A stretch of 64,000 bases of DNA from Auanema rhodensis (lineage: Eukaryota > Animalia > Nematoda). A program made the translations under genes and the position numbers. Location of the stretch: NCBI GenBank assembly GCA_964057225.1, contig OZ059899.1, forward strand, positions 8,990,001 through 9,054,000, written 5' to 3'. This document shows positions 10,562 through 64,000 of this stretch, in pieces (within the stretch, counting starts at the first letter, position 1; each line of letters opens with the position of its first letter). Under the pieces are notes generated by a model, which made no database searches, had not been told where the DNA came from, and worked only from the letters and a program-made list of their open reading frames with translations.

Positions 10562-10790
10562 AGTAGAGAGCCATGCCGAATTTACTAACCACGCCCCCAA
10601 ACAGTTGCTAAAAACATACTTTTGAGGGCGTCAGCTGCTAAAAACATACTTTTGGGGGCGTCAGCTGCTAAAAACATACTTTTGGGGGCGTCAGCTGTCA
10701 AAATCATATTTTCGGCGTCAGCTGTCAAAAATATACTTTTCCTCCCGAGGCAGGCTCTCGAGCCTGCGCATGGATCAAAATGCATGATTT
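10562..10790 (+). repeat. Polinton terminus (TIR) with five ~30-bp subrepeats
   Basis: AGTAGAGAGCCATGCCGAATTTACTAACCACGCCCCC then gtcagctgctaaaaacatacttttgggggc-type repeats; recurs at 25639, 41012, 60762 and as a variant at 62700. Confidence 0.88.
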
Positions 10791-11081
10791 TTTTTTAAAA
10801 TCATTTTTAAAATTATTTTTTAATGTATTATTTTAAATGAATTTTTATTATTTATATATTTGTTAATTGTATTTGTAAATATTTTAAAAATTATTTCTTT
10901 TTGAATGTGTTTTTAATAATATTTCTTTTTAAATGTATTTTAATATTTATATATTTTTTAATTGTATCTTTAAAACTGAATAAATTATTTCTCATATATA
11001 TTGGTTTTTAATTATTTAAATTATTTTATAAGGTAATCAATATGTTCACCGTACCTCTTATGGGTTAATCAATGGAACTCA

Positions 11082-11860
11082 TATCGAAGGTTAATTCGAT
11101 AAGAAGTAATAAATATTTAAACTTTAATGAAACACATATCGAAGGTTGATTCGATAAGATATATTTTACATATTTATTTTTTAATTTTATTTGTTTACAT
11201 TGTTTATAGATTGTGTTTATTATAGTTTATAATTATTAATTTAACTTTTAAAAAGTTTGTTGTTTATCTAGGCGAACCATTTTGTTCACCGTACCTCTTA
11301 TGGGTAAATCAATGGAACACATATCGAAAGTTAATTCGATAAGAACGATATGAAATACAAAAGTTAATGGAACACATATCGAAGGTTAATTCGATAAGAA
11401 CGATATGAAATACAAAAGTTAATGGAACACATATCGAAGATTAATTCGATAAGATCGTTAAAACAGGTGCGCTGACCCACACATGTACCACATGGCAAAA
11501 GTTTTGTTCATAAAAATATGATAAATAGCTGTACAGCACAAGTACCCATAACGCTAAAGAATACTTACTATGCCAAGGGGTCATGGGTATATAGTTTTTA
11601 GTATCAAAAATGTTAATGGAACACATATCGAATATCAATTCGATAAGATTGTGGAAACAGATACGTTGACCTACAATGAACCAAATGGCAAAGCACTTGT
11701 TCATTAAAGTATAACAAATAGCTGTATAGCATATGCATCAAGATTTCTAATATTCTCAAATTACGTGGAAAGAAGAGTATATAGAAAATGTTTTAGTGTG
11801 TATATTACTAATATTCTAATACCCTAACTCAAAGAACACATATCGAAGATTAATTCGATA
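11082..11860. promoter_or_regulatory. Seven palindromic TATCGAA-N6-TTCGATA boxes upstream of pPolB
   Basis: Starts at 11082, 11137, 11322, 11377, 11432, 11626, 11841. The function is inferred only. Confidence 0.6.
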
Positions 11861-12094
11861 AGATTGTTGGAACCGGTACGCTGACCACAACAATACATGC
11901 GTATTTATTAACAACGGATTGGCAACTGCCACTGTTGACAGCTGTAATATGATACAATGTTGAGTGTTGGCAACATTGTTACGTCACAATAAAACAACTG
12001 ACTGTTCTTGCAATGAAGTGTAATATAAATGTGTAAAATGAAATATGGATAACTACCTCTCAGAGTTTGCATAATTTTATTCTAACAAGATACA

Positions 12095-15000
12095 ATGGCT
12101 GCTAACAGGTTGTGTTTTTTCCTAGCTTTTTTTTTAAATTAAAATATTTATTTTCAGTTATAAGCGTGTATGTGAAGAGTTGGGGTTCGATTATGAGGAA
12201 ATTTATCAACTCAGGTAATCTAATAATATTTTTAAAATATACATCTTTGTTGTTTTTTTTTTAGTAAGCGCATAAAGCTTACCGAGAGTGGTGGTGTTGA
12301 GCTCTGTGACCCCGCAATAACCACTTCCAATAGTGGTCCCTCGTCATCAAGGGTTATTGAAGTTATCACCTTGGATGACAGCGATAATGAGTAAGCTATC
12401 GTATAATGAAAAAGCATGATTTTTTTTTTCAGAGAATGGAATCCCGAGATGCCATCAACTAGTGGAGAACAATTAGGAGGCGGTTCATCCTTCAACGATA
12501 TTTGTCAAATAAAGGTACGAGCTTTTAACTTTTTTTTTTTATGTTACAATTCTTCTCACTCTATATCTTTTATTTGATTACATATCTTGAGCAATTTTGA
12601 ATTCTGCCATCTATTTTTAAACAAATCATCATACATTTGGTGGCTTTTTGAAAAATAAAATAAAATCTTATCCCAAATCCATGCCATAATATCATTTATT
12701 AAATTTTTATTCATTAAAATACACTTAAATTTAAATATTTTGATGCTCAAAAACTGACACATTTAAATATTTTGTATTTTCTTAACCATTTCACACCATA
12801 TATTTTAAACAATTGTATATTTCTACCACTATTTCATAATTTCATTTTTTAAATTTTTAATCATTAAAAAAAAAAAACATTTAAATTTCAATATTGTGAT
12901 GCTCAAAAACTGAAACATGAAACAGATTTATATTTTCTAAGCCATTTCACTTCATCTCTTTTATTTAATCACATATCTTGAACAAATTTAAATTTCTATC
13001 ACTTTTCCATAATTTCGTTTATTAAATTTTTAATCATTAAAAAACATTTAAATTTCAATATCGTGATGCTCAAAAACTGAAACATTTAAATATTTTGTAT
13101 TTTCTAAGCCATTTCACTTCATCTCTTTCATTTATATATATTTTAAACAATTTTATAATTCTACTATTATTTAATTTTTATTTGTTAAATTTTTAAACAT
13201 TAAAAAAAAAAATTGATGCTCAAAAACTGAAACATTTAAATATTTTGTATTTTTCTAATCGTTTTGAAACAAACTAAACATATATTTGAAAACATTTCAA
13301 TTAAATAAAAAATAACGACTATAACAAACAAAGAGACATAATAATTTAAAGCAAAAGATGAAACAATTCATATATATTCTTAAAACTATTTTTATTTAAA
13401 CTTTTAAAAATAAAAATTAAAAAAAAGCATGTAAGCTGTTATAAATGTTGTTTATTATAGTGGTCACACCGGCGCATAAAACGCACCGGTCGTTTTACCA
13501 ACGTGGTCGTTCGATCGCTCACGTTCCCACACTTGGAAAATGTCGATGAACCAATGCATGTTATCATGCCGCGGTTATTCAACGAATTCCTTGATCGTTG
13601 TCTTGCTGAAAGCGGTGTGCCTGATAAGCAAAAAGCCTTATTTTGTTTATCAATTGAGCACCCTTCCTTTGAAAAGGGCTCCATATTTATGGACTTTCGT
13701 AGAAGGGAGCATCTGGATGGCGTAGCCATTATGAATGCCATCAGCAAGGTGCAGCAATCAAAACGAGAGGCTGTAATCAGCCAGGCAATGAATATTGAGA
13801 TGTATGTGTTTGATGAAAGGCCAGCGCAGCCAAGCCTGATGCCTGGTGAAGGTAGAGTCGGGTTTTATTTTGACCCCGAACTCAAAATACCTGGAACCAT
13901 TGCCAACACTGACTCACATTGTCTGGCTAGATCAGCAGTTGTGGGAATGTGGAAAGCTGACGAGCTGGCCACTGAAGATGGCGATGAGAAGCGAAGGCTG
14001 CAAAACCTTCGTCGCAATTACATCTTATTGCCAAATCAGCCACACCATATCAATTTATTAAATAGGTGTGGTATTTCTGTAGATTTACCAAATTATAATT
14101 TAATTCATTTAAACATTATTGCCAGCTGTAATACAAACTATAAGTTTGTAGTATATGCTAGACCGCCTGGACAGCGTATGTACACTATCCAGAAAATATT
14201 TAATAAAGCGGCTAGCAAATTGGTAACACTAGGTTACCGAAATAATCACTATGATTGTATTACAGCTGGTAGTCGTTCGAAAATTTTTGATGGTATTATA
14301 TGTCAACACTGTAAGTTATCTTACAATACAGTGTTGCATAGATGTAAAGCCAAATGTAAAAAATGCCACACCTATAATTGTAATGCGATGGGGAATGTGG
14401 TTGAGAGTAGCGTGAGGTGTGATAGTTGTAGAGTTTTGTTTAAAACTCAACAATGCTTCGATAGGCATTTGCGAAAAGCCTGCCGAAAATTCAAGGTATT
14501 TTGTGAAAATTTAAAGTTGTACATAACAAGCTTATATTCAGACATGTGTGGCGTGTGATCACTATCACATGGTCCGTGCTGATAGACCGCACAATTGCAA
14601 TGAAAAATTCTGCAAAAAGTGCGGTCAGACAAAGCCTGAAGAGCACTCTTGTTGTTGGGTTCCACCTAACGACAAGAAGAAGGCTCAGCTAAAAAAGAAG
14701 CAAGAAAAGTTCAAGGTTTGTATTTAACATCTTTACAAGTGTAATGCTTACTTGTTTAAGATTATATTTTATGACTTTGAAACAGTTGTGTTAAAAAACG
14801 GCACAAATGTTCATGAATATGCAGATGAACAATGGCCCAATATGGTTGTGTATAACAAATTTTGTGAAAGTTGTATAGATGCCAATTCCTGTGAGAAATG
14901 CACAACCAAGGAGGGCCATTTTGGGTACCAACAAGGTGATAGTGAATGGTCTGTAACAGATCGTTTCCTTGATTGGTTACTCAACTTTTCTGAGAATGAT

Positions 15001-17692
15001 AATGCAATTTTGATTGCGCACAACGGGCCGCGCTTTGACATACATTTCTTGGTGTCTAGGCTGATAAACCGTGGAATATATCCTGACCCCATTTTAAATG
15101 GGACCAAGATTATTAGCATGGTTGTCAAGCCATTAAGAGGTCAAAACATTAACCATTTATGTTTTAAAGATAGTTATTTACTAGTGCCTTTACCCTTATC
15201 AGCGTTACCCAAGGCGTTTGGTGTACCTGATATGAGTAAAGGACAATTCCCATACCTCTTTAACCACCCAATAAATTATGGCAAAGTGCTACCATCCTTG
15301 CCACCAAAGCATTACTATTGTACTGCTAGAATGAAAGCAGAAGACCTAGCTTCATTCAATATTTGGTATGAGGAGCGTAATCAAAGTGTGTTTGATTTTG
15401 ATGAGGAGCTTCTGGAATATTGTAGGACAGATGTCCGTATTTTAACCAACTGTATGAAAGTGTACATGAAGTTGGCCACCGCCACCACTGGCTGGAATCC
15501 TGTCATACAATGTATGACATTTGCCAGTTTCTTTTTATTCCAGGCAAGTTTTTTAAAATACAAGCATTTTCAAAACTAGTATATTACAGTTGAAAATGAA
15601 CCACATTAAAGAGAACCAAGTGGGTATTCTGCCTGAGACTGGTTATTATGCCGGCCAGAAGCAGAGTATAATTGCCATAAAATACATAAAATGGCTAGAA
15701 CACGGATTAGGCCGCCCATTAATGCATAAGCTTAATGGTGGTGAATTTGTTGTGAGAGTAGATGGCCAACGCTATCTACTTGATGCTTATGACAGTGTGG
15801 CTAATCACGGCTATGAGGTGAGTAATTTGTAATAAATGTAAAAAATGATAAAATTTTGTAGTTTAATGGCTGTATTTATCATGGTTGCCCCCAGTGCACC
15901 AACAAGACTGCTATTGCACCAGGCAGAAATGGTGAAACAATGGAAGAGGTAAGCAATACTTTTTTTTAATCATTTTAAGCTGAAACATTTAGGTTTATGA
16001 AAAAACCATGAAAAGGCTTGAGGCTATTCAAAGCCAGGGCATTAGTGTAACCACTGTGTGGGAACACGAAATTACTGCTCAAATGTCATCAAATGAGCAA
16101 ATGGCAAATTTTATGAAGGACACTGAGGTTGTAACTCGATTGGCACCTCGAGATGCCTTCACCGGCGGCCGAACTCAAACATATAAGCTTCTGGCCCAAG
16201 CTTCGGATAGATACTCACTAGAGTATGTGGACTTTTGTTCACTTTATCCATATGTAACGGCATTTGATGCCTATTACCCTGTGGGTAATCCTAAAATGAT
16301 TACTGAGGGCTTTGAGAGTTTTGAGGCATGCTGCCCATACAAGGGCCTTGTGAAATGTGACGTGCTTGCACCCACAAATTTGTTGTATCCTGTATTAGGA
16401 ACACGCATAGGCGGTAAATTAATTTTTACAAACTGCCGCACATGTGCAAACAGAGGCAAAAATGTAACATGCCCGCACCAAGATGATGAAGACGCTCGAA
16501 AGCTGCATCTGACTGTAACGCATGTAGAGCTCGAATGTGCCATACAGCGTGGCTACAAAGTGCTTCATGTTTATGAGGTTTGGCACTGGGATGAATGGCA
16601 GCAAGGAGGCCTATTCAAGGATTTTGTACAAAAGTACATAAAAATTAAGCAAGAGGCATCGGGCTGGCCTAAGCCAAATATGACAGAGGCTGAAAAGGTA
16701 TGTGTCATGAAAAGTATGGCATTAAATAGAATTTTACAGCTAAAATATCTCCAAGAGCACGAGGAGAACACTGGTGTTGCTCTGGAGAGCAACAAAATTG
16801 AAAAGAATGCGGCCATGCGTAGCATTGCCAAACTACAGCTGAATAGGTATGTAAACTTTTAAAAATAAAAATTTACAAATTTGCTTATAGTGTATGGGGT
16901 AAAATGGGTCAAAGACCGGATAAAGCCCAAACCAAGATTATTGGTGTTGAGGATCCTGAAATTGGTAGGATCATAACTGATCCTGCAAGGGAACTCACGG
17001 GCTTCAAAATTGTGGACGATGTGGCGTACTGTACAACAGTGCCAGAGGACTCACACTTGGCACCAGCGCCGTTTACAAATGTAGCCATAGCGGCTTATAC
17101 AACCGCTCATGCAAGGCTACTATTGTATAAGGCAATGGAAAAAATTGGAAAGAACTTGGTGTATACAGGTAATTTTATACTTTGTATACAATTTAAACGT
17201 ACATCATTTAGACACCGATTCTCTAATTTATTTAAAATGCCTCGATCAGCCTGATCCAATTGAGGATATGAAGGGTGAATGGTTAGGTAAACTAACCTCA
17301 GAAATACCCGATGGTTGGTCAATGACCAAATTTGTTTCACCACCTGCAAAAGTTTATAGTTATGAGCTAGTAAATGCAGCTGGTCAGGTCAAGTATATCA
17401 CCAAGGCAAAGGGAGTGGTAAGTATAAAAATATATTATTGAGAAACTTTTTAAAATTACAGACGCTGGACCACACGGCAGCCACCGTGGTAAACTATCAA
17501 AGTATGGAGCGATTGGTTCGAGGACTCGTGATGGATGGAGAAAAATTGGTTTTAAAAACCAAAACAACGTTATTAAAGAGGCAGCTTGGTGCCATATCCA
17601 CGATGGACATGACAAAGAGTACCAAGGTCGTAATGGATAAACTTTGTTATCTAGACGATTTTAGTACTTTACCCTATGGTTATTGTGAATAA
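12095..17692 (+). CDS. pPolB: Protein-primed DNA polymerase B (N-terminal/terminal-protein region, OTU-like, Cys-rich, exonuclease, Vsr-like insert, polymerase), 14 exons, ~1370 aa
   Basis: Exons 12095-12108, 12158-12214, 12265-12390, 12433-12514, 13461-14495, 14542-14715, 14761-15543, 15590-15817, 15862-15948, 15993-16697, 16740-16846, 16891-17168, 17212-17417, 17462-17692 join in frame (4113 nt). Motifs YDFE, AHNGxRFD, YCRTDV, EFNGCIYHGCPQC, DFCSLYP, KLQLNSVWGK, YTDTDS, TLPYGY. Confidence 0.92.
12515..13460 (+). repeat. pPolB intron 4, built of degenerate ~150-170-bp AT-rich repeats
   Basis: tgatgctcaaaaactga core near 12741, 12897, 13064, 13214; units 2 and 3 have one extra copy. Confidence 0.75.
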
Positions 17693-17830
17693 TTTTTAAT
17701 ATATTTGAATTTATAAATTTTATTATTGCGTGTATATTTGTATATGGTTGTATTTATAGATTTTTATGTATAGTTGTATTAATAAATTTTATTCTTCTCA
17801 TCAAATGTTTTAAAGAGTTTATTACATACA

Positions 17831-19165
17831 TTACAAACTGGTATCAATATATGGAGCACGATTGTTGTCAATTGAAAGAATAGAGTCATATTCTGCATAA
17901 ACAATAGCATATAAACCCTCTTGCGGCGTTTGTTGACCAAATTCCAATTTCAGGGCCACATTACCTTGTCGTATAACATCAAATAACTCGGACGAGTGTA
18001 CAGTCGGTGAAATATCAAATACAAAAAATGTGAAGCCGGTTTTATACATTGCTGGTGTAATACCATTGGATGAATCTGTACGACCAAGGCCCAAACCCTC
18101 CAACATATCAATATATGCTGTGGCATAGGAAGAACGCCATTCTAAATTATAAGGGCGGGTAGGTATTACCCGATTGTTGAGCGTCAAGTATATATTTTTC
18201 AATTCAAACGGTTTAAAGTTGAATGGCGAATGTTTAAAAGTACCATTATAGGCGTGTGCGCCGACAAGACCTACTACAACACGTTTCGGTGTATGCGACG
18301 TGAATAATATGTTATTGGGTGAATCCAAACGGCCTCCTTCTATGAAATAAGAGCGCATTTTCACTGACGTCATGGGGTAGTGTATTCGTTCCTTTACAAG
18401 TTTATCTTCTATAGCCATAGCTAATCCAGCGTTTAGATCAAACTCTTGAATAAGCAAGTGCACATCGTTGATATCTATTTTCAGGTTTGGAAACTCCTCC
18501 TTCATTGCAGCATCCTTGCTTTCATTATTCCATCCAAGTGTGTCAATTAAGAAATTATCACGGTTTGGATATGCAGTTAGCTCCATTTTTGAATAGTTTA
18601 CAAACAGTCGTTCCTGATTGAATAAGTCGATACTGATGGAAGCAGCCATCTCACACAATATGCCATTTTTAACAAGCCCTTGTCGCGCTCTAAATCCAGA
18701 ACTGGCTGCATTATCTATATATCTATCCGCATAATAGCCTGATATGGCAAGTTTGCTCTCTTTAACATCGTTGCTATACATTAGAATATTCTCAATATAT
18801 GTTTTGTAGGCATGATTCACGGTAGAGTCATACACGCTAACATCACCAATTTTTAAATGATACGAGTTTATCAAACTGGCTGCAAATTGTTGGCATGGTG
18901 CAAAAACAAGGTTGTCTGGTACTGGATCGCCGTTTGTGTTTACAATTTTGAATTTTACATTCAACCAACACCTTCTCAGATTAAGAAATGATTTGGAATT
19001 TTGGGCTATAACAAATTCCCATGGTCCTTGAGGAAGAAAAGTATTTTTTAAAGGAACTTGTACAGTACGAGTTGATTCAACACCTAATGCCAACGCCGGT
19101 ATGTCACTATAATTAATATTAGGTAAAAGTGCTTGTGCTGATTTTGAATCTATCAATTTAGCCAT
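17831..19165 (-). CDS. Major capsid protein (double jelly-roll, Polinton PY-like), 444 aa
   Basis: Size, position and motifs (SIDLFNQER, PKRVVVGLV, AYNG..SPFNF, YAEYD) match Polinton MCPs; intronless. Confidence 0.88.
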   Translation of the reverse strand: MAKLIDSKSAQALLPNINYSDIPALALGVESTRTVQVPLKNTFLPQGPWEFVIAQNSKSFLNLRRCWLNVKFKIVNTNGDPVPDNLVFAPCQQFAASLINSYHLKIGDVSVYDSTVNHAYKTYIENILMYSNDVKESKLAISGYYADRYIDNAASSGFRARQGLVKNGILCEMAASISIDLFNQERLFVNYSKMELTAYPNRDNFLIDTLGWNNESKDAAMKEEFPNLKIDINDVHLLIQEFDLNAGLAMAIEDKLVKERIHYPMTSVKMRSYFIEGGRLDSPNNILFTSHTPKRVVVGLVGAHAYNGTFKHSPFNFKPFELKNIYLTLNNRVIPTRPYNLEWRSSYATAYIDMLEGLGLGRTDSSNGITPAMYKTGFTFFVFDISPTVHSSELFDVIRQGNVALKLEFGQQTPQEGLYAIVYAEYDSILSIDNNRAPYIDTSL

Positions 19166-19618: not shown

Positions 19619-19668
19619 ATTGAACCGCACGTGCGCAATACAAAAGTTACACTAGATCATTTTACTAA

Positions 19669-20124: not shown

Positions 20125-20382
20125 TCAACTTCGCCATTAAAACGTCACCTGCTACATTAGGTGGTCAGTTATGAATATTCCCTGTCACTGTGAATTATGT
20201 ATAAGATACACGTTGGAACAATCTGTGCCAACACCCCTGTACAAAAAGATTTTGAAACGTATTTCAGTGCCATTCATTAAAGGAATATCTCTGGGACTAG
20301 GCTTTTGTACAACACTAGTCATTATTCCACTCATTATATAAAAGTGAGTTGACTGTGTGTGGTTGTTTTTCAATTTCCTCTA

Positions 20383-20847: not shown

Positions 20848-20852
20848 AACAT

Positions 20853-21712: not shown

Positions 21713-21791
21713 CACAGACCACCACCTGATGCGTGCACACTAGTATAAATGAAATCATTTGCATTATAGGTACATTTACGAGTGGTTGATT

Positions 21792-22439: not shown

Positions 22440-22451
22440 TGTGCATGTTCA

Positions 22452-43271: not shown

Positions 43272-43304
<33 letters not shown>

Positions 43305-50547: not shown

Positions 50548-50597
50548 ATTGAACCGCACGTGCGCAATACAAAAGTTACACTAGATCATTTTACTAA

Positions 50598-51776: not shown

Positions 51777-51781
51777 AACAT

Positions 51782-53197: not shown

Positions 53198-53209
53198 TGT
53201 GCATGTTCA

Positions 53210-55276: not shown

Positions 55277-55573
55277 TTTTTCACTGTTGTTGTAAACAAT
55301 TGTAATTATAATAAATGATTTATTTGATATATCGCATAATGTAACAATAAAAAACCAGCAAAATACAAACAACAATTCAACCTGGAAAAAAAAATGTAGA
55401 CTATTCAAATTTTCAAATTCTTACCAGTTGGTTGATCATTCGTCCTCAATTGATGAGCCATTGATGGATATTCGCAAGAGCTGGAAAAAAAAAATGTTAC
55501 GGCTGAGAATATAAAAATGCCACATAACAAAACAAGAATAAAACGCCAATTGTACTATTTGTGCTTGTTGTAG

Positions 55574-56160
55574 TCAAAATGAAGGATCAAAGCGGATAAA
55601 CATGTTCAGGTTGAGTGCTTCAGGACTTAGTTTAAAGTAGAATACATTCTGCTTATAACCAAAAGTCTTTACAGTAGCCTCATCTGCATATATAACAATA
55701 TAGCCCATATTGTTCAACAATTGCTTGCACGTCATGGTGTTATAAGAGCGCATCTAAAAAAAATTATAAAATTGAAAATAAATAAATATGCAAGCTTACA
55801 TTAATAGAAAAGTTTTCGGGCTTATAGTGACGAAACTCCTTCAAAAGACCCAACGCATCATTCCTTCCTCTACACTTTATACAGAGGCTGAAACAGTGAT
55901 ACTCGTCTATAACCTGCAATGATTCCCTACAAGTTTTGCAGAGACAAATTGGTCTCATTAATACACTCCTTGGTGGAGTGCTCTCTCTCAGAATCTCCAT
56001 CTGCTTTATTGGTGAATCTAAATTAAAGATTTAAAAAAGACAAGTTAAGGTTCATACCAAAACTTGTGAAATTTGGTGCTGGTGTGGGTGGTCGTGGTAC
56101 TTCAGGTTCAGGCGATTTGCGCACAACATTTGTCACATCAGCAAGTACAGCACGCTTCAT
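55574..56160 (-). CDS. Spliced D-box Cys-rich protein, subfamily B, intact
   Basis: MKRAVLADVTN...PPTP...PICLCKTC...HCFSLCIKC...IRFDPSF*; same two intron positions as subfamily A. Confidence 0.75.
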
Positions 56161-56982
56161 TTCCGCTAAAGATCCAACTTTCTAAAATATAAGGCAAACT
56201 TGCAGAGAGGAGCAGTCTATGGCGATTGGCAAAGAGTGGCAGGAGATGGTGAAACGTCGGATCCTCGGATAGTCGGCAGAGCTGAAATGTAAATGTAGCA
56301 AAATTGCCAACCTTTTATACAAAGATTTTTGTAAAGTACAACCCATTGTGTTACAATCAAGTTTGCTGATGAAATTCTTTTATTAATTAGATTTTACAGC
56401 ATATTTATGCAGATATACTCATCTCATCGACAGTTGCCAACAGTTGGCGCACTCTGAACCTGTAAACAATCTGCATATTAATTAGTTTTTACATCTCTTT
56501 AAACATTATTGTTTACCGTTTGTGCCATAAACAACAGCCATCTCTGTAAAACATTTAGGCTTTTTAAACTTTGCTTAATAGCTCATATATTATTCATAGT
56601 ATAGTTTTACACCCATATTGTAGCACAAAACATATGACTGCCAACGTTTTATATGTAAAAATATTTCATTCTTGAATATTTAAAAATGATTATATTACGA
56701 AACTAAAACTTTTGAAATGTTAAAATGATTATACTATATTTAAACCCCCACAGTGCAGTTATTACTGTTTATTAACCATCGATATGCGTTTCATTGAGGT
56801 CAGCGCAACTGTTTGTTAATCTTATTGTATTTACCTTCAATGTGTGCTCTATAGAGTTATTGTATTGTTATATTAGTAAAATAAAGTTTAAAACTAATCT
56901 TTTATTATAATTTGAAACCTTTACTTGTTAGAATAAATATAATTAATAACAATTCGCAATTTCAAAAATTAATAATTTAATG

Positions 56983-57052
56983 TCGTTCTTATCGAATTAA
57001 CTTTCGATATGTGTTCCATTGAATTACCCATAACAAGTACGGTGAACAAAAT
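56983..57052 (-). repeat. Inverted copy of left-arm subterminal sequence including one palindromic box
   Basis: Reverse complement resembles 11279-11349 (ttttgttcaccgtac..tatgggtaa..caatggaacacatatcgaaagttaattcgataagaacga). Confidence 0.8.
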
Positions 57053-57559
57053 TATCTACATGCAAAAATTTTATTGATCTTTAAAAATACAAATAAAATA
57101 GTACAAACACAATACAATAAAAAATAAACAAAATAAGTAAACAAACATTATTAATAAATATAATAAAGAAATAAAGAAATAAATAAAATTTAAAAACAAA
57201 TTTATATATTTAAAATTTAAATATAATTTATATATAAAATTTAAAGTTTAAATATAATTTATATATATAAAATTTAAATATAATTTAAATATTTAAAGTT
57301 TAAATAAAATTTATATATATATAAAATTTAAGTATAATTTAAATATTTAAAATTAAGATGTCTGCAACAATTATTTGGCCCCCGCTTTAAAAATGCTCTA
57401 GAAGCATATGATGATGCAATGTCTACACCCTATAGTCATTTACTGATTGACAACCATCCTTTAACAAATGAGAAACAGCGTATACTATCAGATATAACAG
57501 CGGAGCACCCTATTGTTTATGTAGCCAGAAATATATTCAGTGTTTAATGTGCATGTTCA

Positions 57560-57868
57560 ATGAGTGGTCGTATTTTGTCAAATTACAACTTTTTATCTTC
57601 TTGTGCCAAAACCCCTTGTTCTGTTTCCTCATTTTCTTTTTCACAAATTGAAATTATTGTTGAAATTGTATTTAATATTGTGAAAAATAATAATTTTCTC
57701 TTAACTAACAAGGAATATAAAACCCTTTTGCCCATATCCTCATTATTACGTCAAATAGCTTTGATACGCACACCCGAAAAGGCTAAAACTTTATTGGCAA
57801 CGATTTCACACAAACAATTGAAAACAATAGTTTCATGCGGAATTGCTTATTTTGGTTTTAAAAGATGA
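57560..57868 (+). CDS. 102-aa Polinton protein (fragment 4)
   Basis: As unit 1. Confidence 0.6.
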   Translation: MSGRILSNYNFLSSCAKTPCSVSSFSFSQIEIIVEIVFNIVKNNNFLLTNKEYKTLLPISSLLRQIALIRTPEKAKTLLATISHKQLKTIVSCGIAYFGFKR

Positions 57869-58602
57869 AACTCAATCATAAATATCGTCTAATCCCTGTT
57901 GATGATGAAACGCTGAATATAGACAAGTTTGATGCTGAATTGAAGCTCTTACGAGAGGATAAATCTATACCCGATCATAAAAAGGCTGAACTATACGAAG
58001 ACTTGATTACCCGTCTCAAAAACTATAGAGAAAGCATAGATGCGCCTATATCAGTACAAGTGGAAAATGCTGATCCACCATTATTGCCAGAATACAAGCT
58101 GCCACGAAAGTATAACGATCTGTGGGAAAGATTTCCAGAGGTGCGTACAAACAAAAATAACCAACTTGTGATTAATAATGAGCCCGTACCAAACACAAAT
58201 ATTACAAAAATTTTGGATTTTGTACTGGATAAAACAAAGACGGAACCCAATGGATTCTCAGTATTAGCCAAATTTTTAGCCAGTAATGGGGTCTCTAGCC
58301 CTAACAAGAAGGCAAAAAATGAAGAGCCTGCCGTCAGTAACAAGGATTCAGTTGATCCCGTGCCTACATCCACATTGGCTGTCACAGACTTGGATGCTAC
58401 TATTAATATATTACCTAGAACACCACGTCATCGTAAGGCTGTTATTCGATATTCACCCTCTCCGCGTCGTACATTCAAATCCAAAACAATAAATAAAAAG
58501 GCAAAACCCGCTGACACTGGTGAATCTTATTACACACCTCAGGCGGGAGAAACACAGAATGGCAAAGGCCGTAAACGATTCTACATTAGATTATGGAAGT
58601 AA
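57865..58602 (+). CDS. 245-aa Polinton protein (fragment 4)
   Basis: As unit 1. Confidence 0.7.
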   Translation: MKLNHKYRLIPVDDETLNIDKFDAELKLLREDKSIPDHKKAELYEDLITRLKNYRESIDAPISVQVENADPPLLPEYKLPRKYNDLWERFPEVRTNKNNQLVINNEPVPNTNITKILDFVLDKTKTEPNGFSVLAKFLASNGVSSPNKKAKNEEPAVSNKDSVDPVPTSTLAVTDLDATINILPRTPRHRKAVIRYSPSPRRTFKSKTINKKAKPADTGESYYTPQAGETQNGKGRKRFYIRLWK

Positions 58603-59626
58603 TGTTTTGGAGAACATTTATTATAATATTAAGCATCCAGCTTCTTATACGTCTGCCAAAAATCTATTATTGGAAGCGCGAAAGCATGGCATCGCAAAAG
58701 CACAAGTTGAAAGTTTTTTGCAAGACTCTGAAACTTTTACACGTCATAAACCAACCAGACTGCATATGCAGACTAAAAAGACTAGAGGCTGTGGTCGATT
58801 CCTAACAATGCAAGCAGATTTGGTTGATATGCAAAAATATAAAAAATCAAATGACGGCTATGCTTACATGTTGACCATGATTGATGTTTATACACGCATG
58901 TTATATGTTATGCCTTTGAAAACTAAAGGTGGTTTAGAGGTTGCTACTGCATTTGAAAATGTATTCAAGGATTTTATACCAATCCAACTAATAACGGATA
59001 ACGGTGCAGAGTTTTATAATAGTCATTGTGAAAAACTATTCAAAAAATTTGCCATACTGCATGGATCAACAAGTTCACCACAAAAGGCGGCAATGGTGGA
59101 GCGAGCAAATAGAACTTTAAAAACGCGCATGATGAAATATCTCTATTACAAGAATAATCATCGATGGATTGATATACTAGATGACTTGGTCGAAGGAATA
59201 AACAAATCTTATAATCGGTCGATTAAAATGCGCCCCGTAGATGTTACAGCAAATATATTCGTTGAAGAATATGCACCAGCTGTTCGCAACCGATTCAAAA
59301 TTGGTGATAATGTTCGCATAAGCAAGAACAGGCGTACTTTTGAAAAAAGTTACGAGTCTGGATATACAATGGAACTATTCACAATTGATGAGATTGTAGC
59401 CGGGAAACCAACCGTGTATAAACTTGTAGATTATAATGGTGAACGTATAAAGGGAATATTCTATGAGCCTGAACTTGTGTTGGCTACTAATAAAAGCAAC
59501 CAGTACTATATTGAGAAAGTTTTAAAAGAGCGTACACGAAATGGTAAACGCCAAGTATTTGTAAAATGGAGTGGCTATCCCGACAACTTTAATGAATGGA
59601 TAGATGCAGAAAATTTAAATGTATAA
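58559..59626 (+). CDS. RVE integrase-chromodomain (fragment 4)
   Basis: Open frame, DDE triad intact. Confidence 0.9.
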   Translation: MAKAVNDSTLDYGSNVLENIYYNIKHPASYTSAKNLLLEARKHGIAKAQVESFLQDSETFTRHKPTRLHMQTKKTRGCGRFLTMQADLVDMQKYKKSNDGYAYMLTMIDVYTRMLYVMPLKTKGGLEVATAFENVFKDFIPIQLITDNGAEFYNSHCEKLFKKFAILHGSTSSPQKAAMVERANRTLKTRMMKYLYYKNNHRWIDILDDLVEGINKSYNRSIKMRPVDVTANIFVEEYAPAVRNRFKIGDNVRISKNRRTFEKSYESGYTMELFTIDEIVAGKPTVYKLVDYNGERIKGIFYEPELVLATNKSNQYYIEKVLKERTRNGKRQVFVKWSGYPDNFNEWIDAENLNV

Positions 59627-60933
59627 TTTTTCACTGTTGTTGTAAACAATTGTATTAATAATAAATGATTTATTTGATCAATCGTTCTTATTGTAACAAT
59701 AAAAAACCAGCAAAACATAAAAGCCAAGACAATGATATAACCTATAATTATAAACTGATTAATATTTAAATTTTCAATGCTTACCAGTTGGTTAGAGAGT
59801 CGGCTGTTGATGGATAATTTCAAACTTCAAGAGCTGGAAAAAAATGTTACGGCTAAGAAAATTTAAATATAACATAACAAAATCAACCAACTGTCCATTA
59901 AACAGTTTGTGCTTGTTGTAGTCAAAACGATGGATCAAAACGGATAAGCATATTCAAGTTGAGCGCCTGTTGACTTAATTTAAAGTAGAACACATTCTGC
60001 TTATAACCAAAAGACTTGACAGTTGACTCATCAGTATAAATGGCAATGTAACCCATATTATTCAACAATTGTTTTGATGACATATTGGTCTCATAACTAC
60101 AGGCTGTTGTGAAGAGCTATCCTTTGAGATTTGTACCTGCTTTTTTGGTATGTCTAAACAAAAAATAATTGATAACAAAAATAAAACCTTACCAAAGAAT
60201 GTGGCAGCAAAGTTGGGTCCTGGTGTGGGTGGTCGTGGAACATCCGGTTCCGATGTCGAAGGTACAATATTCTCTAAATCAACAAGAGCGGAACGCTTCA
60301 TGTTTGTAGCCCAATTGGAGGCTTTTCCTAAACAACAACGAACTTTTACGTCTAGGGTCCAAGTAGAGTAGAGGAAAGTCCTAGCAGCAGTCTGTTGACG
60401 TTCGATCAGATCGTCGACTTGTTGGCAGAGGTGGATCGGCGAGAAGACTTGGTGGCGGAGCTGGATCGAAGAGTAGACTTGTTGACAGAGCTGGATCGTA
60501 GAGTCGACTTGATGGCGGAGCTGAAATGCAAATTTCGGATCGTCGACTTGTTGGCAGAGGTGGATCGGCGATCGGTGATCAGATCGTCGACTTGTTGGCA
60601 GAGGTGGATCGGCGAGAAGATTTGGTGGCGGAGCTGGATCGGAGAGTAGACTTGTTGACAGAGCTGGATCGTAGAGTCGACTTTTTGGCGGAGCTGAAAT
60701 GCATATTTCGGTCTAAAAAATTTTGCCACCTTTTATACAAACTTTGTTGTAAAGCTATACCAGTAGAGAGCCATGCCGAATTTATTAACCACGCCCCCAA
60801 ACAGTTGCTAAAAACATACTTTTGAGGGCGTCAGCTGCTAAAAACATACTTTTGGGGGCGCCAGCTGTCAAAATCATATTTTCGGCGTCAGCTGTCAAAA
60901 ATATACTTTTTCTCCCGAGGCAGGCTCTCGAGC

Positions 60934-61905
60934 TTTTTCTAAAACTTTTTCTATATAGTACTTGTTGCTTTTATTAGTAGCCAAGACAAGTTCAGGTTCG
61001 TAGAATATTCCCTTTATACGTTCACCATTATAATCTACAAGTTTATACACGGTTGGGTTTCCGGTTACAACCTCATCAATTGTGAACAGCTCCATTGTAT
61101 ATCCAGACTCGTAGCTTTTTTCAAAAGTACGCCAATTTTTGCTTATGCGAACAGTATCACCAATTTTAAAGCGGCTTTTAACAGCTGTTGCATATTCTTC
61201 AATGAATATATTTGCTTTAACATCAATGGGCCGCATTTTTATAGAGCGGTTATAAGATTTGTTTATTCCTTCAACCAAATCATCTAGTATATCAATCCAT
61301 CGATGATTATTCTTGTAATAGAGATATTTCATCATGCGCGTTTTTAAAGTTCTATTTGCTCGCTCCACCATTGCCGCCTTTTGTGGTGAACTTGTTGATC
61401 CATGCAGTATGGCAAATTTTTTGAATAGTTTTTCACAATGACTATTATAAAACTCTGCACCGTTATCCGTTATTAGTTGGATTGGTATAAAATCCTTGAA
61501 TACATTTTCAAATGCAGTAGCAACCTCTAAACCACCTTTAGTTTTCAAAGGCATAACATATAACATGCGTGTATAAACATCAATCATGGTCAACATGTAA
61601 GCATAGCCGTCATTTGATTTTTTATATTTTTGCATATCAACCAAATCTGCTTGCATTGTTAGGAATCGACCACAGCCTCTAGTCTTTTTAGTCTGCATAT
61701 GCAGTCTGGTTGGTTTATGACGTGTAAAAGTTTCAGAGTCTTGCAAAAAACTTTCAACTTGTGCTTTTGCGATGCCATGCTTTCGCGCTTCCAATAATAG
61801 ATTTTTGGCAGACGTATAAGAAGCTGGATGCTTAATATTATAATAAATGTTCTCCAAAACATTACTTCCATAATCTAATGTAGAATCGTTTACGGCCTTT
61901 GCCAT
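60934..61905 (-). pseudogene. Integrase truncated within the chromodomain
   Basis: Ends YYIEKVLEK and then reads into the terminus sequence. Confidence 0.85.
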
Positions 61906-62599
61906 TCTGTGTTTCTCCCGCCTGAGGTGTGTAATAAGATTCACCAGTGTCAGCGGGTTTTGCCTTTTTATTTATTGCTTTGGATTTGAATGTGCGACGC
62001 GGAGAGGGTGAATATCGAATAACAGCCTTACGATGACGTGGTGTTCTAGGTAATATATTAATAGTAGCATCCAAGTCTGTGACAGCCAATGTGGATGTAG
62101 GCACGGGATCAACTGAATCCTTGTTACTGACGGCAGGCTCTTCATTTTTTGCCTTCTTGTTAGGGCTAGAGACCCCATTACTGGCTAAAAATTTGGCTAA
62201 TACTGAGAATCCATTGGGTTCCGTCTTTGTTTTATCCAGTACAAAATCCAAAATTTTTGTAATATTTGTGTTTGGTACGGGCTCATTATTAATCACAAGT
62301 TGGTTATTTTTGTTTGTACGCACCTCTGGAAATCTTTCCCACAGATCGTTATACTTTCGTGGCAGCTTGTATTCTGGCAATAATGGTGGATCAGCATTTT
62401 CCACTTGTACTGATATAGGCGCATCTATGCTTTCTCTATAGTTTTTGAGACGGGTAATCAAGTCTTCGTATAGTTCAGCCTTTTTATGATCGGGTATAGA
62501 TTTATTCTCTCGTAAGAGCTTCAATTCAGCATCAAACTTGTCTATATTCAGCGTTTCATCATCAACAGGGATTAGACGATATTTATGATTGAGTTTCAT
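61862..62599 (-). CDS. 245-aa Polinton protein (inverted copy)
   Basis: Open ORF. Confidence 0.7.
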   Translation of the reverse strand: MKLNHKYRLIPVDDETLNIDKFDAELKLLRENKSIPDHKKAELYEDLITRLKNYRESIDAPISVQVENADPPLLPEYKLPRKYNDLWERFPEVRTNKNNQLVINNEPVPNTNITKILDFVLDKTKTEPNGFSVLAKFLASNGVSSPNKKAKNEEPAVSNKDSVDPVPTSTLAVTDLDATINILPRTPRHRKAVIRYSPSPRRTFKSKAINKKAKPADTGESYYTPQAGETQNGKGRKRFYIRLWK

Positions 62600-62699
62600 C
62601 TTTTAAAACCAAAATAAGCAATTCCGCATGAAACTATTGTTTTCAATTGTTTGTGTGAAATCGTTGCCAATAAAGTTTTAGCCTTTTCGGGTGTGCGTA

Positions 62700-64000
62700 A
62701 GTAGAGAGCCGTGCAAAATTTACTAACCACGCCCCCAAACAGCTGTCAAAAACATACTTTTGGGGGCGTCAGCTGCTAAAAACATACTTTGGGGCGCGTC
62801 AGCTGTCAAAAACATATTTTTGAGCGTCAGCTGTTAAAATCATATTTTGGGATCATGGTTCATGGATTCTCCTTTTTTAAATTTAAAAATCATGATTTAA
62901 AGCATGATATGGGTGTAAAAGTATACTATGAATAATATATGAGCTATTAAGCAAAGTTTAAAAAGCCTAAATGTTTTACAGAGATGGCTGTTGTTTATGG
63001 CACAAACGGTAAACAATAATGTTTAAAGAGATGTAAAAACTAATTAATATGCAGATTGTTTACAGGTTCAGAGTGCGCCAACTGCTGGCAACTGTCGATC
63101 AGATGAGTATATCTGCATAAATATGCTGTAAAATCTAATTAATAAAAGAATTTCATCAGCAAACTTGATTGTAACACAATGGGTTGTACTTTACAAAAAT
63201 CTTTGTATAAAAGGTTGGCAATTTTGCTTCATTTACATTTCAGCTCTGCCAACTATCCGAGGATCCGACGTTTCACCATCTCCTGCCACTCTTTGCCAAT
63301 CGCCATAGACTGCTCCTCTCTGCAAGTTTGCCTTAATTTTCAGAAAGTTGGATCTTTAGCGGAAATGAAGCGTGCTGTACTTGCTGATGTGACAAATGTT
63401 GTGCGCAAATCGCCTGAACCTGAAGTACCGCGACCACCCACACCAGCTCCAAATTTCACAAGTTTTGGTATGAACCTTAACTTGTATTTTTTTTAATCTT
63501 TAATTTAGATTCACCAATAAAGCAGATGGAGATTCTGAGAGAGAGCATTCCACCAAAGAGTGTATTAATGAGACCAATTTGTCTCTGCAAAACTTATAGG
63601 GAATCATTGCAGGTTATAGACGAGTATCACTGTTTCAGCCTCTGTATAAAGTGTAGAGGAAGGAATGATGCGTTGGGTCTTTTGAAGGAATTTCGTCATT
63701 ATAAGCCCGAAAACTTTTCTATTAATGTAAGCTTGCATATTTATTTATTTTCAATTTTATCATTTTTTAGATGCGCTCTTATAACACCATGACGTGCAAG
63801 CAATTGTTGAACAATATGGGCTATATTGTTATATATGCAGATGAGGCTACTGTAAAGACTTTTGGTTATAAGTAGAATGTATTCTACTTTAAACTAAGTC
63901 CAGAAGCACTCAACCTGAACATGTTTATCCGCTTTGATCCTTCATTTTGACTACAACAAGCACAAATAGTACAATTGGCGTTTTATTCTTGTTTTGTTAT
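62700..64000 (-). mobile_element. Right end of an inverted subfamily-B Polinton (variant TIR plus right arm), continues beyond window
   Basis: AGTAGAGAGCCGTGCAAAATTTACTAACCACGCCCCC at 62700; ~62907-64000 is the reverse complement of ~55525-56618. Confidence 0.88.
63365..63950 (+). pseudogene. D-box Cys-rich gene, subfamily B, with nonsense mutation
   Basis: CAG>TAG at 63873-63875 and CKTC>CKTY. Confidence 0.72.

What the first reader, a model, noticed from the sequence alone, without database searches (positions are those of the whole stretch)
10562..64000. Self-nesting, head-to-tail Polinton cluster: five termini facing one way, four inside other copies
Seen: AGTAGAGAGCC termini at 10562, 25639, 41012, 60762 and 62700, with no reverse-complement terminus found in the window. 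The junctions at 25639 and 41012 are identical (...gagctgaaa|AGTAGAG) and interrupt sequence that reads gagctgaaatgca at ~60520. The 60762 terminus interrupts the same right arm, and 62700 interrupts the 102-aa ORF. Known: Polintons normally have two TIRs and a 6-bp TSD. Inference: the element repeatedly integrates into itself. One junction was then amplified, either by unequal crossover or through a one-ended circle made by autointegration, giving a provirus concatemer.
Basis: partly seen in the sequence, partly recalled or inferred. Interest (0 to 1): 0.85.

Follow-up and report, generated by a model that had tools for sequence, protein, structure and literature searches.

The report
Nested and tandemly duplicated nematode Polinton pile-up
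A 53-kb stretch of what is probably a nematode genome is filled with copies of one virus-like Polinton/Maverick transposon. Copies have inserted into each other, and one such join was later copied by ordinary unequal recombination, which is a tidy example of known transposon behaviour rather than a new mechanism.

Summary
The 11-base terminus occurs five times, always on the + strand and never reversed (0.23 expected by chance). Four of the five lie inside Polinton DNA. The element is a real Polinton/Maverick: protein-primed polymerase, rve integrase with a chromodomain, a double-jelly-roll capsid protein, a Walker-type ATPase and a weak protease match. Its closest named relatives are in rhabditid nematodes.

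The interpretation needs three corrections.

1. Only U1–U3 are head-to-tail. The copies starting at 60762 and 62700 have their genes reversed, and 62700 is a right-end terminus.
2. The two identical junctions are one junction duplicated. Unit 2 is a clean chimera: it matches unit 3 at 127 sites left of 39653–39669 and unit 1 at 320 sites to the right, with no exceptions on the right. That fits one unequal homologous exchange. Independent joins therefore number four: host DNA, site X, X+62 bp and the 102-aa ORF.
3. Nesting does not close inside the window. Unit 3 lacks its last 207 bp and abuts an old inverted left-arm fragment.

No unit has all genes unbroken. Related loci were not fetched, because this is a provirus-like element of an animal. 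Interest is moderate: a new member of a known kind.

The parts
6762..9945 (+). Neighbour: tandem array of five tRNA-Arg(ACG) genes with a 608-bp period. The last tRNA ends at 9600, 961 bp before the first Polinton terminus.
10562..25638 (+). Unit U1 (15,077 bp): left terminus joined to non-Polinton DNA. It has body type 1 and right arm A, and is cut at site X (...GAGCTGAAA).
25639..41011 (+). Unit U2 (15,373 bp, the repeat period): a chimera with the head of U3 and the tail of U1. It is cut at the same site X.
41012..56618 (+). Unit U3: the same head as U2 (about 99.8% identical) and right arm B, which runs through the X-equivalent (56279-56291). It stops 207 bp short of where copy C6 has its terminus.
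25630..25649 (+). Junction J, first copy: site X of arm A joined to the exact left terminus.
41003..41022 (+). Junction J, second copy: identical by descent to the first.
39653..39669 (+). Switch interval in U2: U3-like to the left (127 sites) and U1-like to the right (320 sites, no exception). This is the inferred point of unequal exchange. It lies inside the chromodomain-coding end of the integrase gene, where arms A and B begin to diverge.
56771..57352 (-). Fragment F: an old, inverted left-arm fragment, 69-76% identical to the left arms of U1 and U2, with no terminus. The stretch 56619-56770 is unassigned.
57359..60761 (+). Copy C4: 5'-truncated, starting inside the ATPase gene. It has body type 1, a whole integrase, and arm A with site X uninterrupted (60518, 60691) inside a 173-bp tandem duplication. 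It is cut 62 bp past X by the next terminus.
60762..62699 (-). Copy C5: a left-type terminus of 172 bp (97.7% identical to the U2/U3 left end) joined, inside a short palindrome, to reverse-complement integrase, p245 and part of p102. The chromodomain end of the integrase is missing.
62700..64000 (-). Copy C6: a right-type terminus (150 bp, 88-89% identical to the left ends), then 58 bp, then the reverse complement of arm B (98% identical to U3 55524-56618). It runs off the window.
29037..33238 (+). Protein-primed DNA polymerase B gene of U2. The same gene is at 13482-17683 in U1 and 44411-48612 in U3. Its reading frame is discontinuous in all three.
33386..34720 (-). Major capsid protein, 444 aa, with a double-jelly-roll fold. 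It is unbroken in U1, U2 and U3.
34721..35185 (-). 154-aa Gly-rich protein with a basic tail, unassigned. It is unbroken in all three units.
35224..35679 (+). 151-aa protein with a sub-threshold match to the adenovirus-type protease family. It is unbroken in all three units.
35914..36402 (+). 162-aa ORF with sub-threshold C2H2 zinc-finger matches.
36408..37202 (-). 264-aa ORF, unassigned; it may be the penton/minor capsid protein by position only. U2 and U3 lack its first codons. The U1 copy (20853-21715) is broken.
21759..22439 (+). Packaging ATPase of U1, 226 aa, with visible Walker A and B motifs; it is whole. The U2 copy (37224-37823) and the U3 copy (52598-53197) are 5'-truncated.
37836..38144 (+). 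102-aa ORF. The C5 copy of it is the target of the C6 terminus.
38141..38878 (+). 245-aa ORF, unassigned. It is unbroken in U1, U2, U3, C4 and C5.
38796..39902 (+). Integrase (rve core plus C-terminal chromodomain) of U2. It is whole also in U3 (54170-55276) and C4 (58520-59626). It is broken in U1 (23412-24522) and C-terminally cut in C5 (60895-61944, - strand).
25639..25788 (+). Terminal repeat of about 150 bp containing 30-bp sub-repeats. The same feature is at 10562-10740, 41012-41161, 60762-60933 and 62700-62848.
25811..29036 (+). AT-rich left arm with 55-bp and 167-bp tandem repeats. It has no ORF of 90 aa or more, apart from an ORF at 28994-29302 (-) that overlaps its last 43 bp, and no fusogen-sized gene.

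Best explanation
The region from 10562 to 64000 is a pile-up of one Polinton/Maverick family in what is probably a rhabditid nematode genome, lying just downstream of a tRNA-Arg gene array.

Four independent integrase-type joins are visible, each starting at the exact terminal base:
- U1 into non-Polinton DNA.
- A type-B copy (now U3) into the right sub-terminal arm of U1 at site X, in the same orientation.
- C5 into the same arm of another copy (C4), 62 bp further on.
- C6 into the 102-aa ORF of C5.

Because U1 and U3 lay head-to-tail with 13-14 kb of homologous body, one unequal homologous exchange between them created the chimeric unit U2. The exchange point is at U2 39653-39669, 1.35 kb left of the junction. 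It duplicated the junction with a 15,373-bp period.

What is shown: the exact termini, the chimeric make-up of U2, the orientations and the gene content. What is inferred: that the joins were two-ended integrations whose other ends lie beyond the window, and that clustering reflects the integrase's chromodomain steering integration to silenced, repeat-rich chromatin, so that old copies attract new ones.

Later deletions and rearrangements removed the end of U3 and whatever followed it.
For: Family identity:
- Pfam DNA_pol_B_2 at 3.6e-21 and 5.1e-17, plus rve and Chromo domains.
- Full-length polymerase relatives of 1,224-1,331 aa.
- The capsid model has pLDDT 76.5 and matches Sputnik, PBCV-1 and mavirus capsid proteins at E about 1e-15.
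- Walker A and B motifs are visible in the U1 ATPase ORF.
- The best named integrase relatives are Auanema and Caenorhabditis.

Exact ends: similarity starts at the same base in all five copies, after four different flanks.

One junction, duplicated:
- U2 equals U3 at 127 informative sites, all left of the switch, and equals U1 at 320 sites, all to the right. There are 0 contrary sites on the right. On the left there are 22 U3-private and 11 U2-private sites.
- The U1 and U2 tails differ by no substitution between the two and 7 gap columns. One U2-private site falls in the window that spans the switch.
- The U2 and U3 heads are about 99.8% identical.

U2 is the recombinant: the independent copy C4 shares U1's states at 25 of 27 discriminating sites left of the switch and has arm A on the right (211 sites). 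'Body 1 + arm A' is therefore a natural haplotype.

Not an exact-copy artefact: every unit has private substitutions.

Orientation of C5 and C6.

Precedents:
- Transposon dimers formed by insertion and then expanded by unequal exchange (PMC5932611).
- Several Polintons at one C. elegans locus, with rearrangements (PMC11414722).
- Chromodomain integrases associated with heterochromatin (Gao et al. 2008, PMC2259100, as cited in PMC6839031).
Against: - No copy has both ends in the window, so no target-site duplication could be checked.
- The nest does not close where it should. After U3 there is no right terminus and no remainder of U1's arm A. U3 lacks its last 207 bp and abuts unassigned DNA and an old inverted fragment, so a later deletion has to be assumed.
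- The exchange point lies at the extreme right edge of the U1/U3 homology, in a stretch only about 95-97% identical, not in the long 100% identical middle. This is unexpected for a random crossover, though it fits repair started by a break near the junction.
- U1 is itself a mosaic relative to U2/U3, so a two-parent scheme is a simplification.
- Read-level support for three units could not be examined.
- The role of the chromodomain is inferred from other families, not tested.
Confidence: 0.6

Rival explanations
1. Circle or concatemer route. An intramolecular join of the left terminus to site X of the same molecule gave a 15.4-kb circle, which is exactly the repeat unit. This circle, as a monomer or multimer, entered a resident copy by homologous recombination. 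The resident copy would then be U1's head plus U3's tail.
For: - The unit length equals the distance from the left terminus to X.
- The junction joins an exact terminus to an internal site in the same orientation.
- U3 carries an uninterrupted arm, as the last unit of such an array would.
- The array is followed by non-arm-A DNA, so only a 207-bp loss has to be assumed rather than the loss of a whole nested remainder.
- The site patterns are equally compatible with this route.
Against: - The circle would need to be 'body 2 + arm A', a combination seen only in U2. 'Body 1 + arm A' is seen in two separate copies, U1 and C4, so this route needs an extra earlier recombination.
- No target duplicate of U1's left flank is found after U3.
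- Nothing in the window shows circular molecules.
Confidence: 0.12
2. Assembly artefact: the true locus has one junction (U1-J-U3) or a single unit, and the assembler created the extra unit.
For: - Near-identical 15-kb repeats are hard to assemble.
- U2 contains no large segment that is absent from U1 and U3.
- No reads were available to check.
Against: - U2 has 11 private substitutions and U3 has 22 in the shared head. Units also differ by small length changes.
- Assemblers usually collapse repeats of this kind rather than expand them (own knowledge).
- The other nested joins do not depend on the array.
Confidence: 0.08
3. The junctions are scars of deletion or illegitimate recombination between neighbouring copies, not integrations, as proposed for some transposon arrays whose junctions lack terminal sequence.
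For: - No target-site duplication or closing end can be shown.
- The cluster clearly suffered other rearrangements: the truncation of U3, the 5' cut of C4, the internal join of C5 and the 173-bp duplication.
- Deleted termini are common in DNA-transposon dimers (PMC5932611).
Against: At all four independent joins the Polinton side begins at exactly the terminal base, the same base as at the join to non-Polinton DNA. A random deletion endpoint would hit that base about once in hundreds to thousands of positions, and it would have to do so three times.
Confidence: 0.08
4. Two separate integrations into the same base of site X: U2 into U1, then U3 into U2, through strict sequence specificity.
For: - Two independent joins (X and the C5 site) fall within 62 bp of the same arm, hinting at a preferred region.
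- Site preference is known to drive transposon dimer formation (PMC5932611).
Against: - The tail of U2 shows no substitution against the tail of U1 over 1.35 kb, while the 1.2 kb immediately to the left differs at 30 sites.
- U2's 14-kb head is about 99.8% identical to U3's. This is the pattern of a recombinant, not of a third independent element.
- The other joins use different target sequences.
Confidence: 0.03

Closest known systems
Nematode Polintons/Mavericks (Polinton-1_CB-like; Jeong et al. 2023, PMC10748475; also Kapitonov & Jurka 2006 and Widen et al. 2023, as cited there)
   Same: - Size is about 15.8 kb.
- It has a protein-primed polymerase, an rve integrase, a double-jelly-roll capsid protein, an ATPase, a protease-like ORF and terminal repeats.
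- The closest named integrase relatives are in Auanema and Caenorhabditis.
   Different: - No fusogen (PC1)-sized ORF. The left 3.3 kb is AT-rich and non-coding with tandem repeats.
- The polymerase frame is discontinuous.
- Capsid identity to any database protein is at most 73%.
- Whether the family belongs to the pPolB1 or pPolB2 class was not determined.
Transposon tandem dimers and arrays formed by insertion followed by unequal exchange (hobo, Bari1 and R1 in Drosophila; McGurk & Barbash 2018, PMC5932611)
   Same: - Head-to-tail copies share one identical junction.
- Expansion is by unequal exchange.
- Site preference is the seed of the dimer.
   Different: - Here the seed is a nested insertion 538 bp inside the right end, not a second insertion at the duplicated target site. 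Each junction therefore lacks the right end of the left-hand unit.
- The unit is a 15-kb virus-like element.
- There are only three units.
- The recombinant unit itself can be read.
The eri-6/7 locus of C. elegans, with several Polinton insertions, remnants, inversions and terminal repeats turned into direct repeats (Zhang et al. 2024, PMC11414722)
   Same: A nematode locus that repeatedly received Polintons and was reshaped by recombination between them.
   Different: That locus holds remnants around a host gene. Here near-complete copies are nested and tandemly duplicated, and no host gene is involved apart from the neighbouring tRNA array.
Chromodomain integrases of chromoviruses (Ty3/gypsy) that direct integration to heterochromatin (Gao et al. 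2008, PMC2259100, as cited in PMC6839031)
   Same: A C-terminal chromodomain on an rve integrase, with copies piling up on each other.
   Different: This is a DNA virus-like element, not an LTR retrotransposon. Targeting was not tested here, and the chromatin state of the locus is unknown.
Retroviral autointegration products (own knowledge)
   Same: A terminus joined to an internal site of the same kind of molecule, in the same orientation. The unit equals the distance from terminus to target.
   Different: The haplotype evidence favours a join between two different copies. No circular DNA is shown.

Membership tests
Polinton/Maverick | Protein-primed family B DNA polymerase | tested here: met
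   Pfam DNA_pol_B_2 at 76 and 62 bits against a cut-off of 25.8. There are 2,096 relatives at E<=1e-10, including full-length proteins of 1,224-1,331 aa. The gene is present in U1-U3, but its frame is discontinuous.
Polinton/Maverick | Retroviral-type (rve) integrase | tested here: met
   The rve match scores 33-39 bits against a cut-off of 32.6, and Chromo scores 30-35 bits against a cut-off of 25.1, in U2, U3 and C4. Ninety homologues were found, most with the same two domains.
Polinton/Maverick | Double-jelly-roll major capsid protein | tested here: met
   AlphaFold model with pLDDT 76.5 and pTM 0.80. Foldseek matches Sputnik, PBCV-1, iridovirus and mavirus capsid proteins at E 3e-15 to 1e-11. 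There is no sequence-level match in Pfam or the PDB.
Polinton/Maverick | Minor capsid (penton) protein | tested here: inconclusive
   The candidates, p264 and p154, match no family or solved structure. The single-sequence model of p264 was unusable (pLDDT 41).
Polinton/Maverick | Adenovirus-type cysteine protease | tested here: inconclusive
   Peptidase_C5 scores 18.8 bits, below the cut-off of 21.3, with E 0.0014.
Polinton/Maverick | FtsK/HerA-type packaging ATPase | tested here: inconclusive
   Walker A and Walker B motifs can be read in the U1 ORF. Only sub-threshold P-loop family hits were found.
Polinton/Maverick | Terminal inverted repeats on one element | tested here: inconclusive
   The same 150-bp sequence heads the left arm (U1-U3) and, in inverted relation, the right arm of C6 at 88-89% identity. 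No single copy shows both ends in the window.
Polinton/Maverick | Target-site duplication of 5-8 bp | not testable with these tools
   Every closing end lies outside the window or is deleted. The source assembly is not available, and fetching related loci was barred.
Nematode Polinton core set (Jeong et al. 2023) | PC1/fusogen gene of about 730 aa or more | tested here: not met
   Within the units, the longest ORF outside the genes annotated above is a 213-aa reverse-strand ORF that overlaps the right-arm repeats and crosses the junction. The left arm has no ORF of 90 aa or more. No fusogen protein was in hand for a translated search.
Tandem transposon array by insertion plus unequal exchange | Identical junctions whose flanks are identical by descent, and a unit that is a recombinant of its neighbours | tested here: met
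   Site patterns show 127 sites on one side and 320 on the other, with a single switch point. The outgroup copy C4 supports this.
Tandem transposon array by insertion plus unequal exchange | Seed dimer made by transposition (target duplication at the far side) | not testable with these tools
   The exact terminal base at the junction supports this, but the far side is deleted or outside the window.
Autointegration circle or concatemer | Array flanked by one resident element's two ends on host DNA with one target duplication; extrachromosomal junction copies | tested here: inconclusive
   The right end of U3 is truncated and no duplicate of the left-flank hexamer follows it. The haplotype argument goes against this reading. 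No read data were available.

The most novel reading that the evidence does not exclude
This integrase may prefer a short stretch of the family's own right sub-terminal arm, beside the 30-bp repeat block. Two independent joins lie 62 bp apart, about 480-540 bp from the right terminus. A rough post-hoc estimate of the chance that any two of three random sites in a 15.8-kb element lie that close is about 2%.

If so, the family would build its own landing pads. Same-orientation nests would then seed 15-kb tandem arrays, an early stage of satellite birth from a virus-like element.

In addition, copy C5 carries a left-type terminus fused, inside a palindrome, to its inverted body. It could be a fossil of end regeneration by strand switching during extrachromosomal protein-primed replication.
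Probability: 0.2. Interest if true: 0.65.

Novelty: new member of a known kind. Interest (0 to 1): 0.4.

Why it matters
Polintons are usually catalogued as isolated full-length copies with two terminal repeats, and pile-ups like this one fail such screens and go uncounted. This locus shows, base by base, three things: how nested same-orientation insertion gives a head-to-tail pair; how one unequal exchange turns that pair into an array whose middle unit is a readable recombinant; and how later deletions hide the history.

It also offers a testable hint that a chromodomain-bearing Polinton integrase returns to its own silenced copies, and possibly to one spot in them. Finally, it records a nematode Polinton lineage without a fusogen gene. 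None of this requires a new mechanism.

Tried and rejected
1. Reversed termini. I searched for the 11-mer with one mismatch and for the 30-bp sub-repeat with three mismatches. No reversed copy was found.

2. The 735 bp between U3 and C4 as host DNA. Rejected in part: 56771-57352 is an old inverted left-arm fragment, and 0 of 30 control host stretches gave any hit.

3. The flank 1-10561 as decayed Polinton. blastn and tblastx found nothing. Only a weak terminal-sub-repeat-like stretch near 6600-6670 turned up.

4. p264 as the ATPase. Rejected: it has no P-loop, and the ATPase is the next gene.

5. p264 as the penton. There were no family or structure hits, and the single-sequence model was useless.

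6. Polymerase discontinuities as introns.
- In favour: the spacers are short (31-95 bp with the best reference) and AT-rich (24% against 41% GC).
- Against: none shows a GT...TTTCAG pattern. The nematode acceptor motif used in this test comes from my own knowledge.
- This is left unresolved.
- A joined-exon test of a splice model was left out, because no tool predicts these introns and relatives could not be compared.

7. Host identification from flank ORFs. Nothing usable was found.

8. Steps left out. I did not fetch related loci (search for related loci, the look-up of encoding contigs, collection scans with the DNA search), because the host looks like an animal and the operators bar fetching an animal's virus by any road.

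- Early on, before the host was known, my working and note 1 used ORF-piece bounds of the polymerase gene taken from the ORF listing.
- One search prints gap counts per 500 alignment columns.
- Once in my working I recalled a tRNA sequence from memory.
- After that I kept to counts and outer bounds.

Full report
OBSERVATION. The 11-base terminus AGTAGAGAGCC occurs at 10562, 25639, 41012, 60762 and 62700. All five are on the + strand and none is reversed, even with one mismatch allowed; 0.23 matches are expected by chance. The 30-bp sub-repeats that follow it are likewise found only on the + strand. When the five ends are aligned, similarity begins at exactly the same base, after four different upstream flanks, and the flanks of 25639 and 41012 are identical. 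The uninterrupted form of the interrupted site, GAGCTGAAATGCA, is at 60518 and again at 60691, because copy C4 carries a 173-bp tandem duplication of that block. A one-mismatch version lies in the other arm type at 56279 and, reversed, at 63234.

WHAT THE ELEMENT IS. One 15.4-kb unit carries the following genes.
- A protein-primed family B polymerase: Pfam DNA_pol_B_2 at E 3.6e-21 and 5.1e-17. A library scan found 2,096 relatives at E<=1e-10, including full-length proteins of 1,224-1,331 aa.
- A 444-aa protein whose model (pLDDT 76.5) matches the double-jelly-roll capsid proteins of Sputnik, PBCV-1, iridovirus and mavirus at E about 1e-15.
- A weak adenovirus-protease-like ORF.
- An ATPase with readable Walker A and B motifs.
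- An rve integrase with a C-terminal chromodomain.

This is a Polinton/Maverick. The closest named integrase relatives are from Auanema sp. (66% identity over 57% of the query) and Caenorhabditis. The capsid protein has no database match above 73% identity. The host is therefore probably a rhabditid nematode whose proteins are not in the database. Compared with the nematode core gene set (PMC10748475), no fusogen-sized ORF is present. The left 3.3 kb is AT-rich, non-coding and full of 55-bp and 167-bp tandem repeats.

MAP. Self-comparison gives the following layout.
- 1-10561: non-Polinton flank, holding a five-copy tRNA-Arg(ACG) array with a 608-bp period.
- U1, 10562-25638.
- U2, 25639-41011.
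- U3, 41012-56618.
- 56619-56770: unassigned.
- F, 56771-57352: an inverted left-arm fragment, 69-76% identical to the other left arms; none of 30 control host stretches gave a hit.
- C4, 57359-60761: + orientation, starting inside the ATPase gene.
- C5, 60762-62699.
- C6, 62700-64000.

Two right-arm types exist. Arm A is in U1, U2 and C4. Arm B is in U3 and C6. They share the site-X motif but are otherwise 50-80% identical.

The DNA behind the 62700 terminus is the reverse complement of arm B, 98% identical to U3 55524-56618. That terminus is therefore the right end of a copy lying in the opposite gene orientation.

The DNA behind the 60762 terminus is reverse-complement integrase, p245 and p102 sequence. 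This terminus, however, is left-type: 97.7% identical to the U2/U3 left end over 172 bp, against 88% to C6's right end. It is joined to the inverted body inside a short palindrome.

'Head-to-tail' therefore applies to U1-U3 only.

ONE JUNCTION, NOT TWO. A three-way alignment of the units gives these site patterns.
- U2 shares U3's base at 127 informative sites, all to the left of U2 39653-39669.
- U2 shares U1's base at 320 sites, all to the right of that interval, with no exception on the right.
- On the left there are 22 U3-private and 11 U2-private sites.
- The tails of U1 and U2 (1.35 kb up to the junction) differ by no substitution between the two and 7 gap columns.
- The heads of U2 and U3 (14 kb) are about 99.8% identical.

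U2 is thus the head of U3 fused to the tail of U1, and the two junctions are identical by descent. Adding C4 as an outside copy shows which unit is the recombinant. Left of the switch, C4 agrees with U1 against U2 and U3 at 25 sites, with 2 contrary. Right of the switch, it agrees with U1 and U2 against U3 at 211 sites. 'Body type 1 + arm A' is therefore a haplotype seen in two separate copies, which makes U2 the recombinant. This is the signature of one unequal homologous exchange between a head-to-tail pair U1-J-U3. It is the route by which transposon dimers are thought to expand into arrays (PMC5932611). The private substitutions in every unit argue against an exact-copy assembly artefact, although reads could not be checked.

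HOW MANY SELF-INSERTIONS. Four joins are independent: U1 into non-Polinton DNA; a type-B copy into arm A at X; C5 into arm A of C4, 62 bp past the X-equivalent; and C6 into the 102-aa ORF of C5. At each, the Polinton side starts at the terminal base. This is hard to get from random deletion and is what an integrase-made join looks like. In arm B the X-equivalent lies 538 bp from the right terminus. Two of the three intra-element targets therefore fall in one 62-bp stretch of the right sub-terminal arm, a hint of a preferred spot (roughly 2% by chance, post hoc).

WHAT DOES NOT FIT SIMPLE NESTING. If U3 were a two-ended insertion in U1, its right terminus and the rest of U1's arm A should follow it. 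Instead U3 stops 207 bp short of its terminus and abuts unassigned DNA and fragment F, so a later deletion must be assumed. The closing ends of C4, C5 and C6 would lie beyond the window, so no target-site duplication can be tested. The exchange point also sits at the very edge of the U1/U3 homology rather than in the long identical middle. This fits repair started near the junction but was not predicted.

The main rival is a 15.4-kb circle, made by an intramolecular join at X and then recombined into a resident copy. It explains the unit length and needs a smaller deletion. It also requires the otherwise unseen 'body 2 + arm A' molecule.

STATE OF THE GENES. These are counts only.
- The capsid protein, p154, the protease-like ORF, the zinc-finger ORF, p102 and p245 are unbroken in U1, U2 and U3. 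p102 and p245 are unbroken also in C4, and p245 in C5.
- Polymerase: 5-7 frame switches and 1-2 in-frame stops against the three best-covered full-length relatives, the same in all three units. The spacers are short and AT-rich, like nematode introns, but lack the usual acceptor motif.
- p264: one frame switch in U1. In U2 and U3 its first codons are missing.
- ATPase: whole in U1. In U2 and U3 it is 5'-truncated by one deletion that the two units share. In C4 it is cut by the copy's boundary.
- Integrase: two frame switches in U1; whole in U2, U3 and C4; C-terminally cut in C5, where the chromodomain is lost.
- No unit has every gene unbroken.

MECHANISM AND COMPARISON. The most likely history has five stages.
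1. An old copy (F) and later U1 and C4 landed in the same few kilobases next to a tRNA array.
2. Younger copies landed in them.
3. A same-orientation nest (U1, U3) underwent unequal exchange, giving U2.
4. Deletions trimmed the right side.
5. The clustering itself is most simply explained by the chromodomain on the integrase. In chromoviruses that domain goes with integration into heterochromatin (Gao et al. 2008, cited in PMC6839031). This stage is inference.

Repeated Polinton insertion and rearrangement at one nematode locus has a precedent at eri-6/7 in C. elegans (PMC11414722). My literature searches found no description of self-nested or tandem Polintons as such. Both processes are nevertheless standard transposon biology.

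VERDICT. The feature is real. The cluster is a new member of a known kind, of moderate interest (0.4). The more novel readings are a self-targeting hot spot in the right arm and C5 as a fossil of end regeneration during protein-primed replication. They are not excluded, but each rests on a single window.

LIMITS AND SLIPS.
- Related loci were not fetched, as barred.
- The joined-exon test was left out.
- One search prints gap counts per 500 columns.
- I once recalled a tRNA sequence from memory in my working, without using it in any tool call or conclusion.

Noticed in passing
window 6762-9945: Five identical tRNA-Arg(ACG) genes form a 608-bp tandem repeat (98-99% identical units). The array ends 617 bp before the first Polinton terminus. 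Whether the family favours tRNA neighbourhoods is unknown.
   Followed up: partly
window ~6600-6670: A stretch just upstream of the tRNA array resembles two of the 30-bp terminal sub-repeats, in + orientation (a 20-mer with 2 mismatches; 0.03 such matches expected). It may be a very old terminus remnant or may be chance. No other Polinton homology was found in the flank.
   Followed up: partly
window 29037-33238 (and the U1 and U3 copies): The polymerase frame is discontinuous at 5-7 points, while about 6 kb of other genes in the same units carry no break. The spacers are 31-95 bp long and 24% GC, against 41% GC in the coding parts. This looks intron-like, but no TTTCAG acceptors are present. 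The contrast is unexplained.
   Followed up: partly
window 60762-60937: C5's left-type terminal 172 bp is fused to its inverted body inside a short palindrome (an 8-bp stem with a 2-base loop). This is compatible with a large inversion, or with a lost right arm replaced by an inverted copy of the left end.
   Followed up: partly
window 60416-60761: There is a 173-bp tandem duplication of the 30-bp-repeat block plus site X in C4's right arm. The C5 terminus sits in the second copy.
   Followed up: yes
window 25811-29036 (and the U1 and U3 left arms): The left arm is 3.3 kb long, 27-29% GC and non-coding, with 55-bp and 167-bp tandem repeats. No fusogen gene is present, unlike described nematode Polintons. 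U1's left arm is only 90-95% identical to that of U2 and U3 and differs in length.
   Followed up: partly
window 35914-36402: A 162-aa ORF inside the element has sub-threshold C2H2 zinc-finger matches (23 bits against a cut-off of 27). It is conserved in all three units.
   Followed up: no
window 34721-35185: A 154-aa Gly-rich protein with a strongly basic C-terminus lies immediately upstream of the capsid gene on the same strand. It has a weak match to a membrane-active peptide family. It could be a core or membrane-lytic virion protein.
   Followed up: no
window 38408-39402: Six of the eleven U2-private substitutions cluster within about 1 kb just left of the exchange point. This could be a small conversion tract or repair-associated mutation.
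   Followed up: no
window 5949-6450: A Ser/Thr-rich low-complexity ORF (157 aa) overlaps a reverse-strand Glu/Val-rich ORF. They lie over an internally repeated stretch (6039-6338) in the flank.
   Followed up: no
window 25530-25635, 40903-41008, 60416-60523, 60589-60696: The right-arm 30-bp repeats next to site X contain a 6-base match to the start of the terminus motif and a GAGCTG core that resembles the CAGCTG core of the terminal sub-repeats. They may be protein-binding sites near the preferred target.
   Followed up: no
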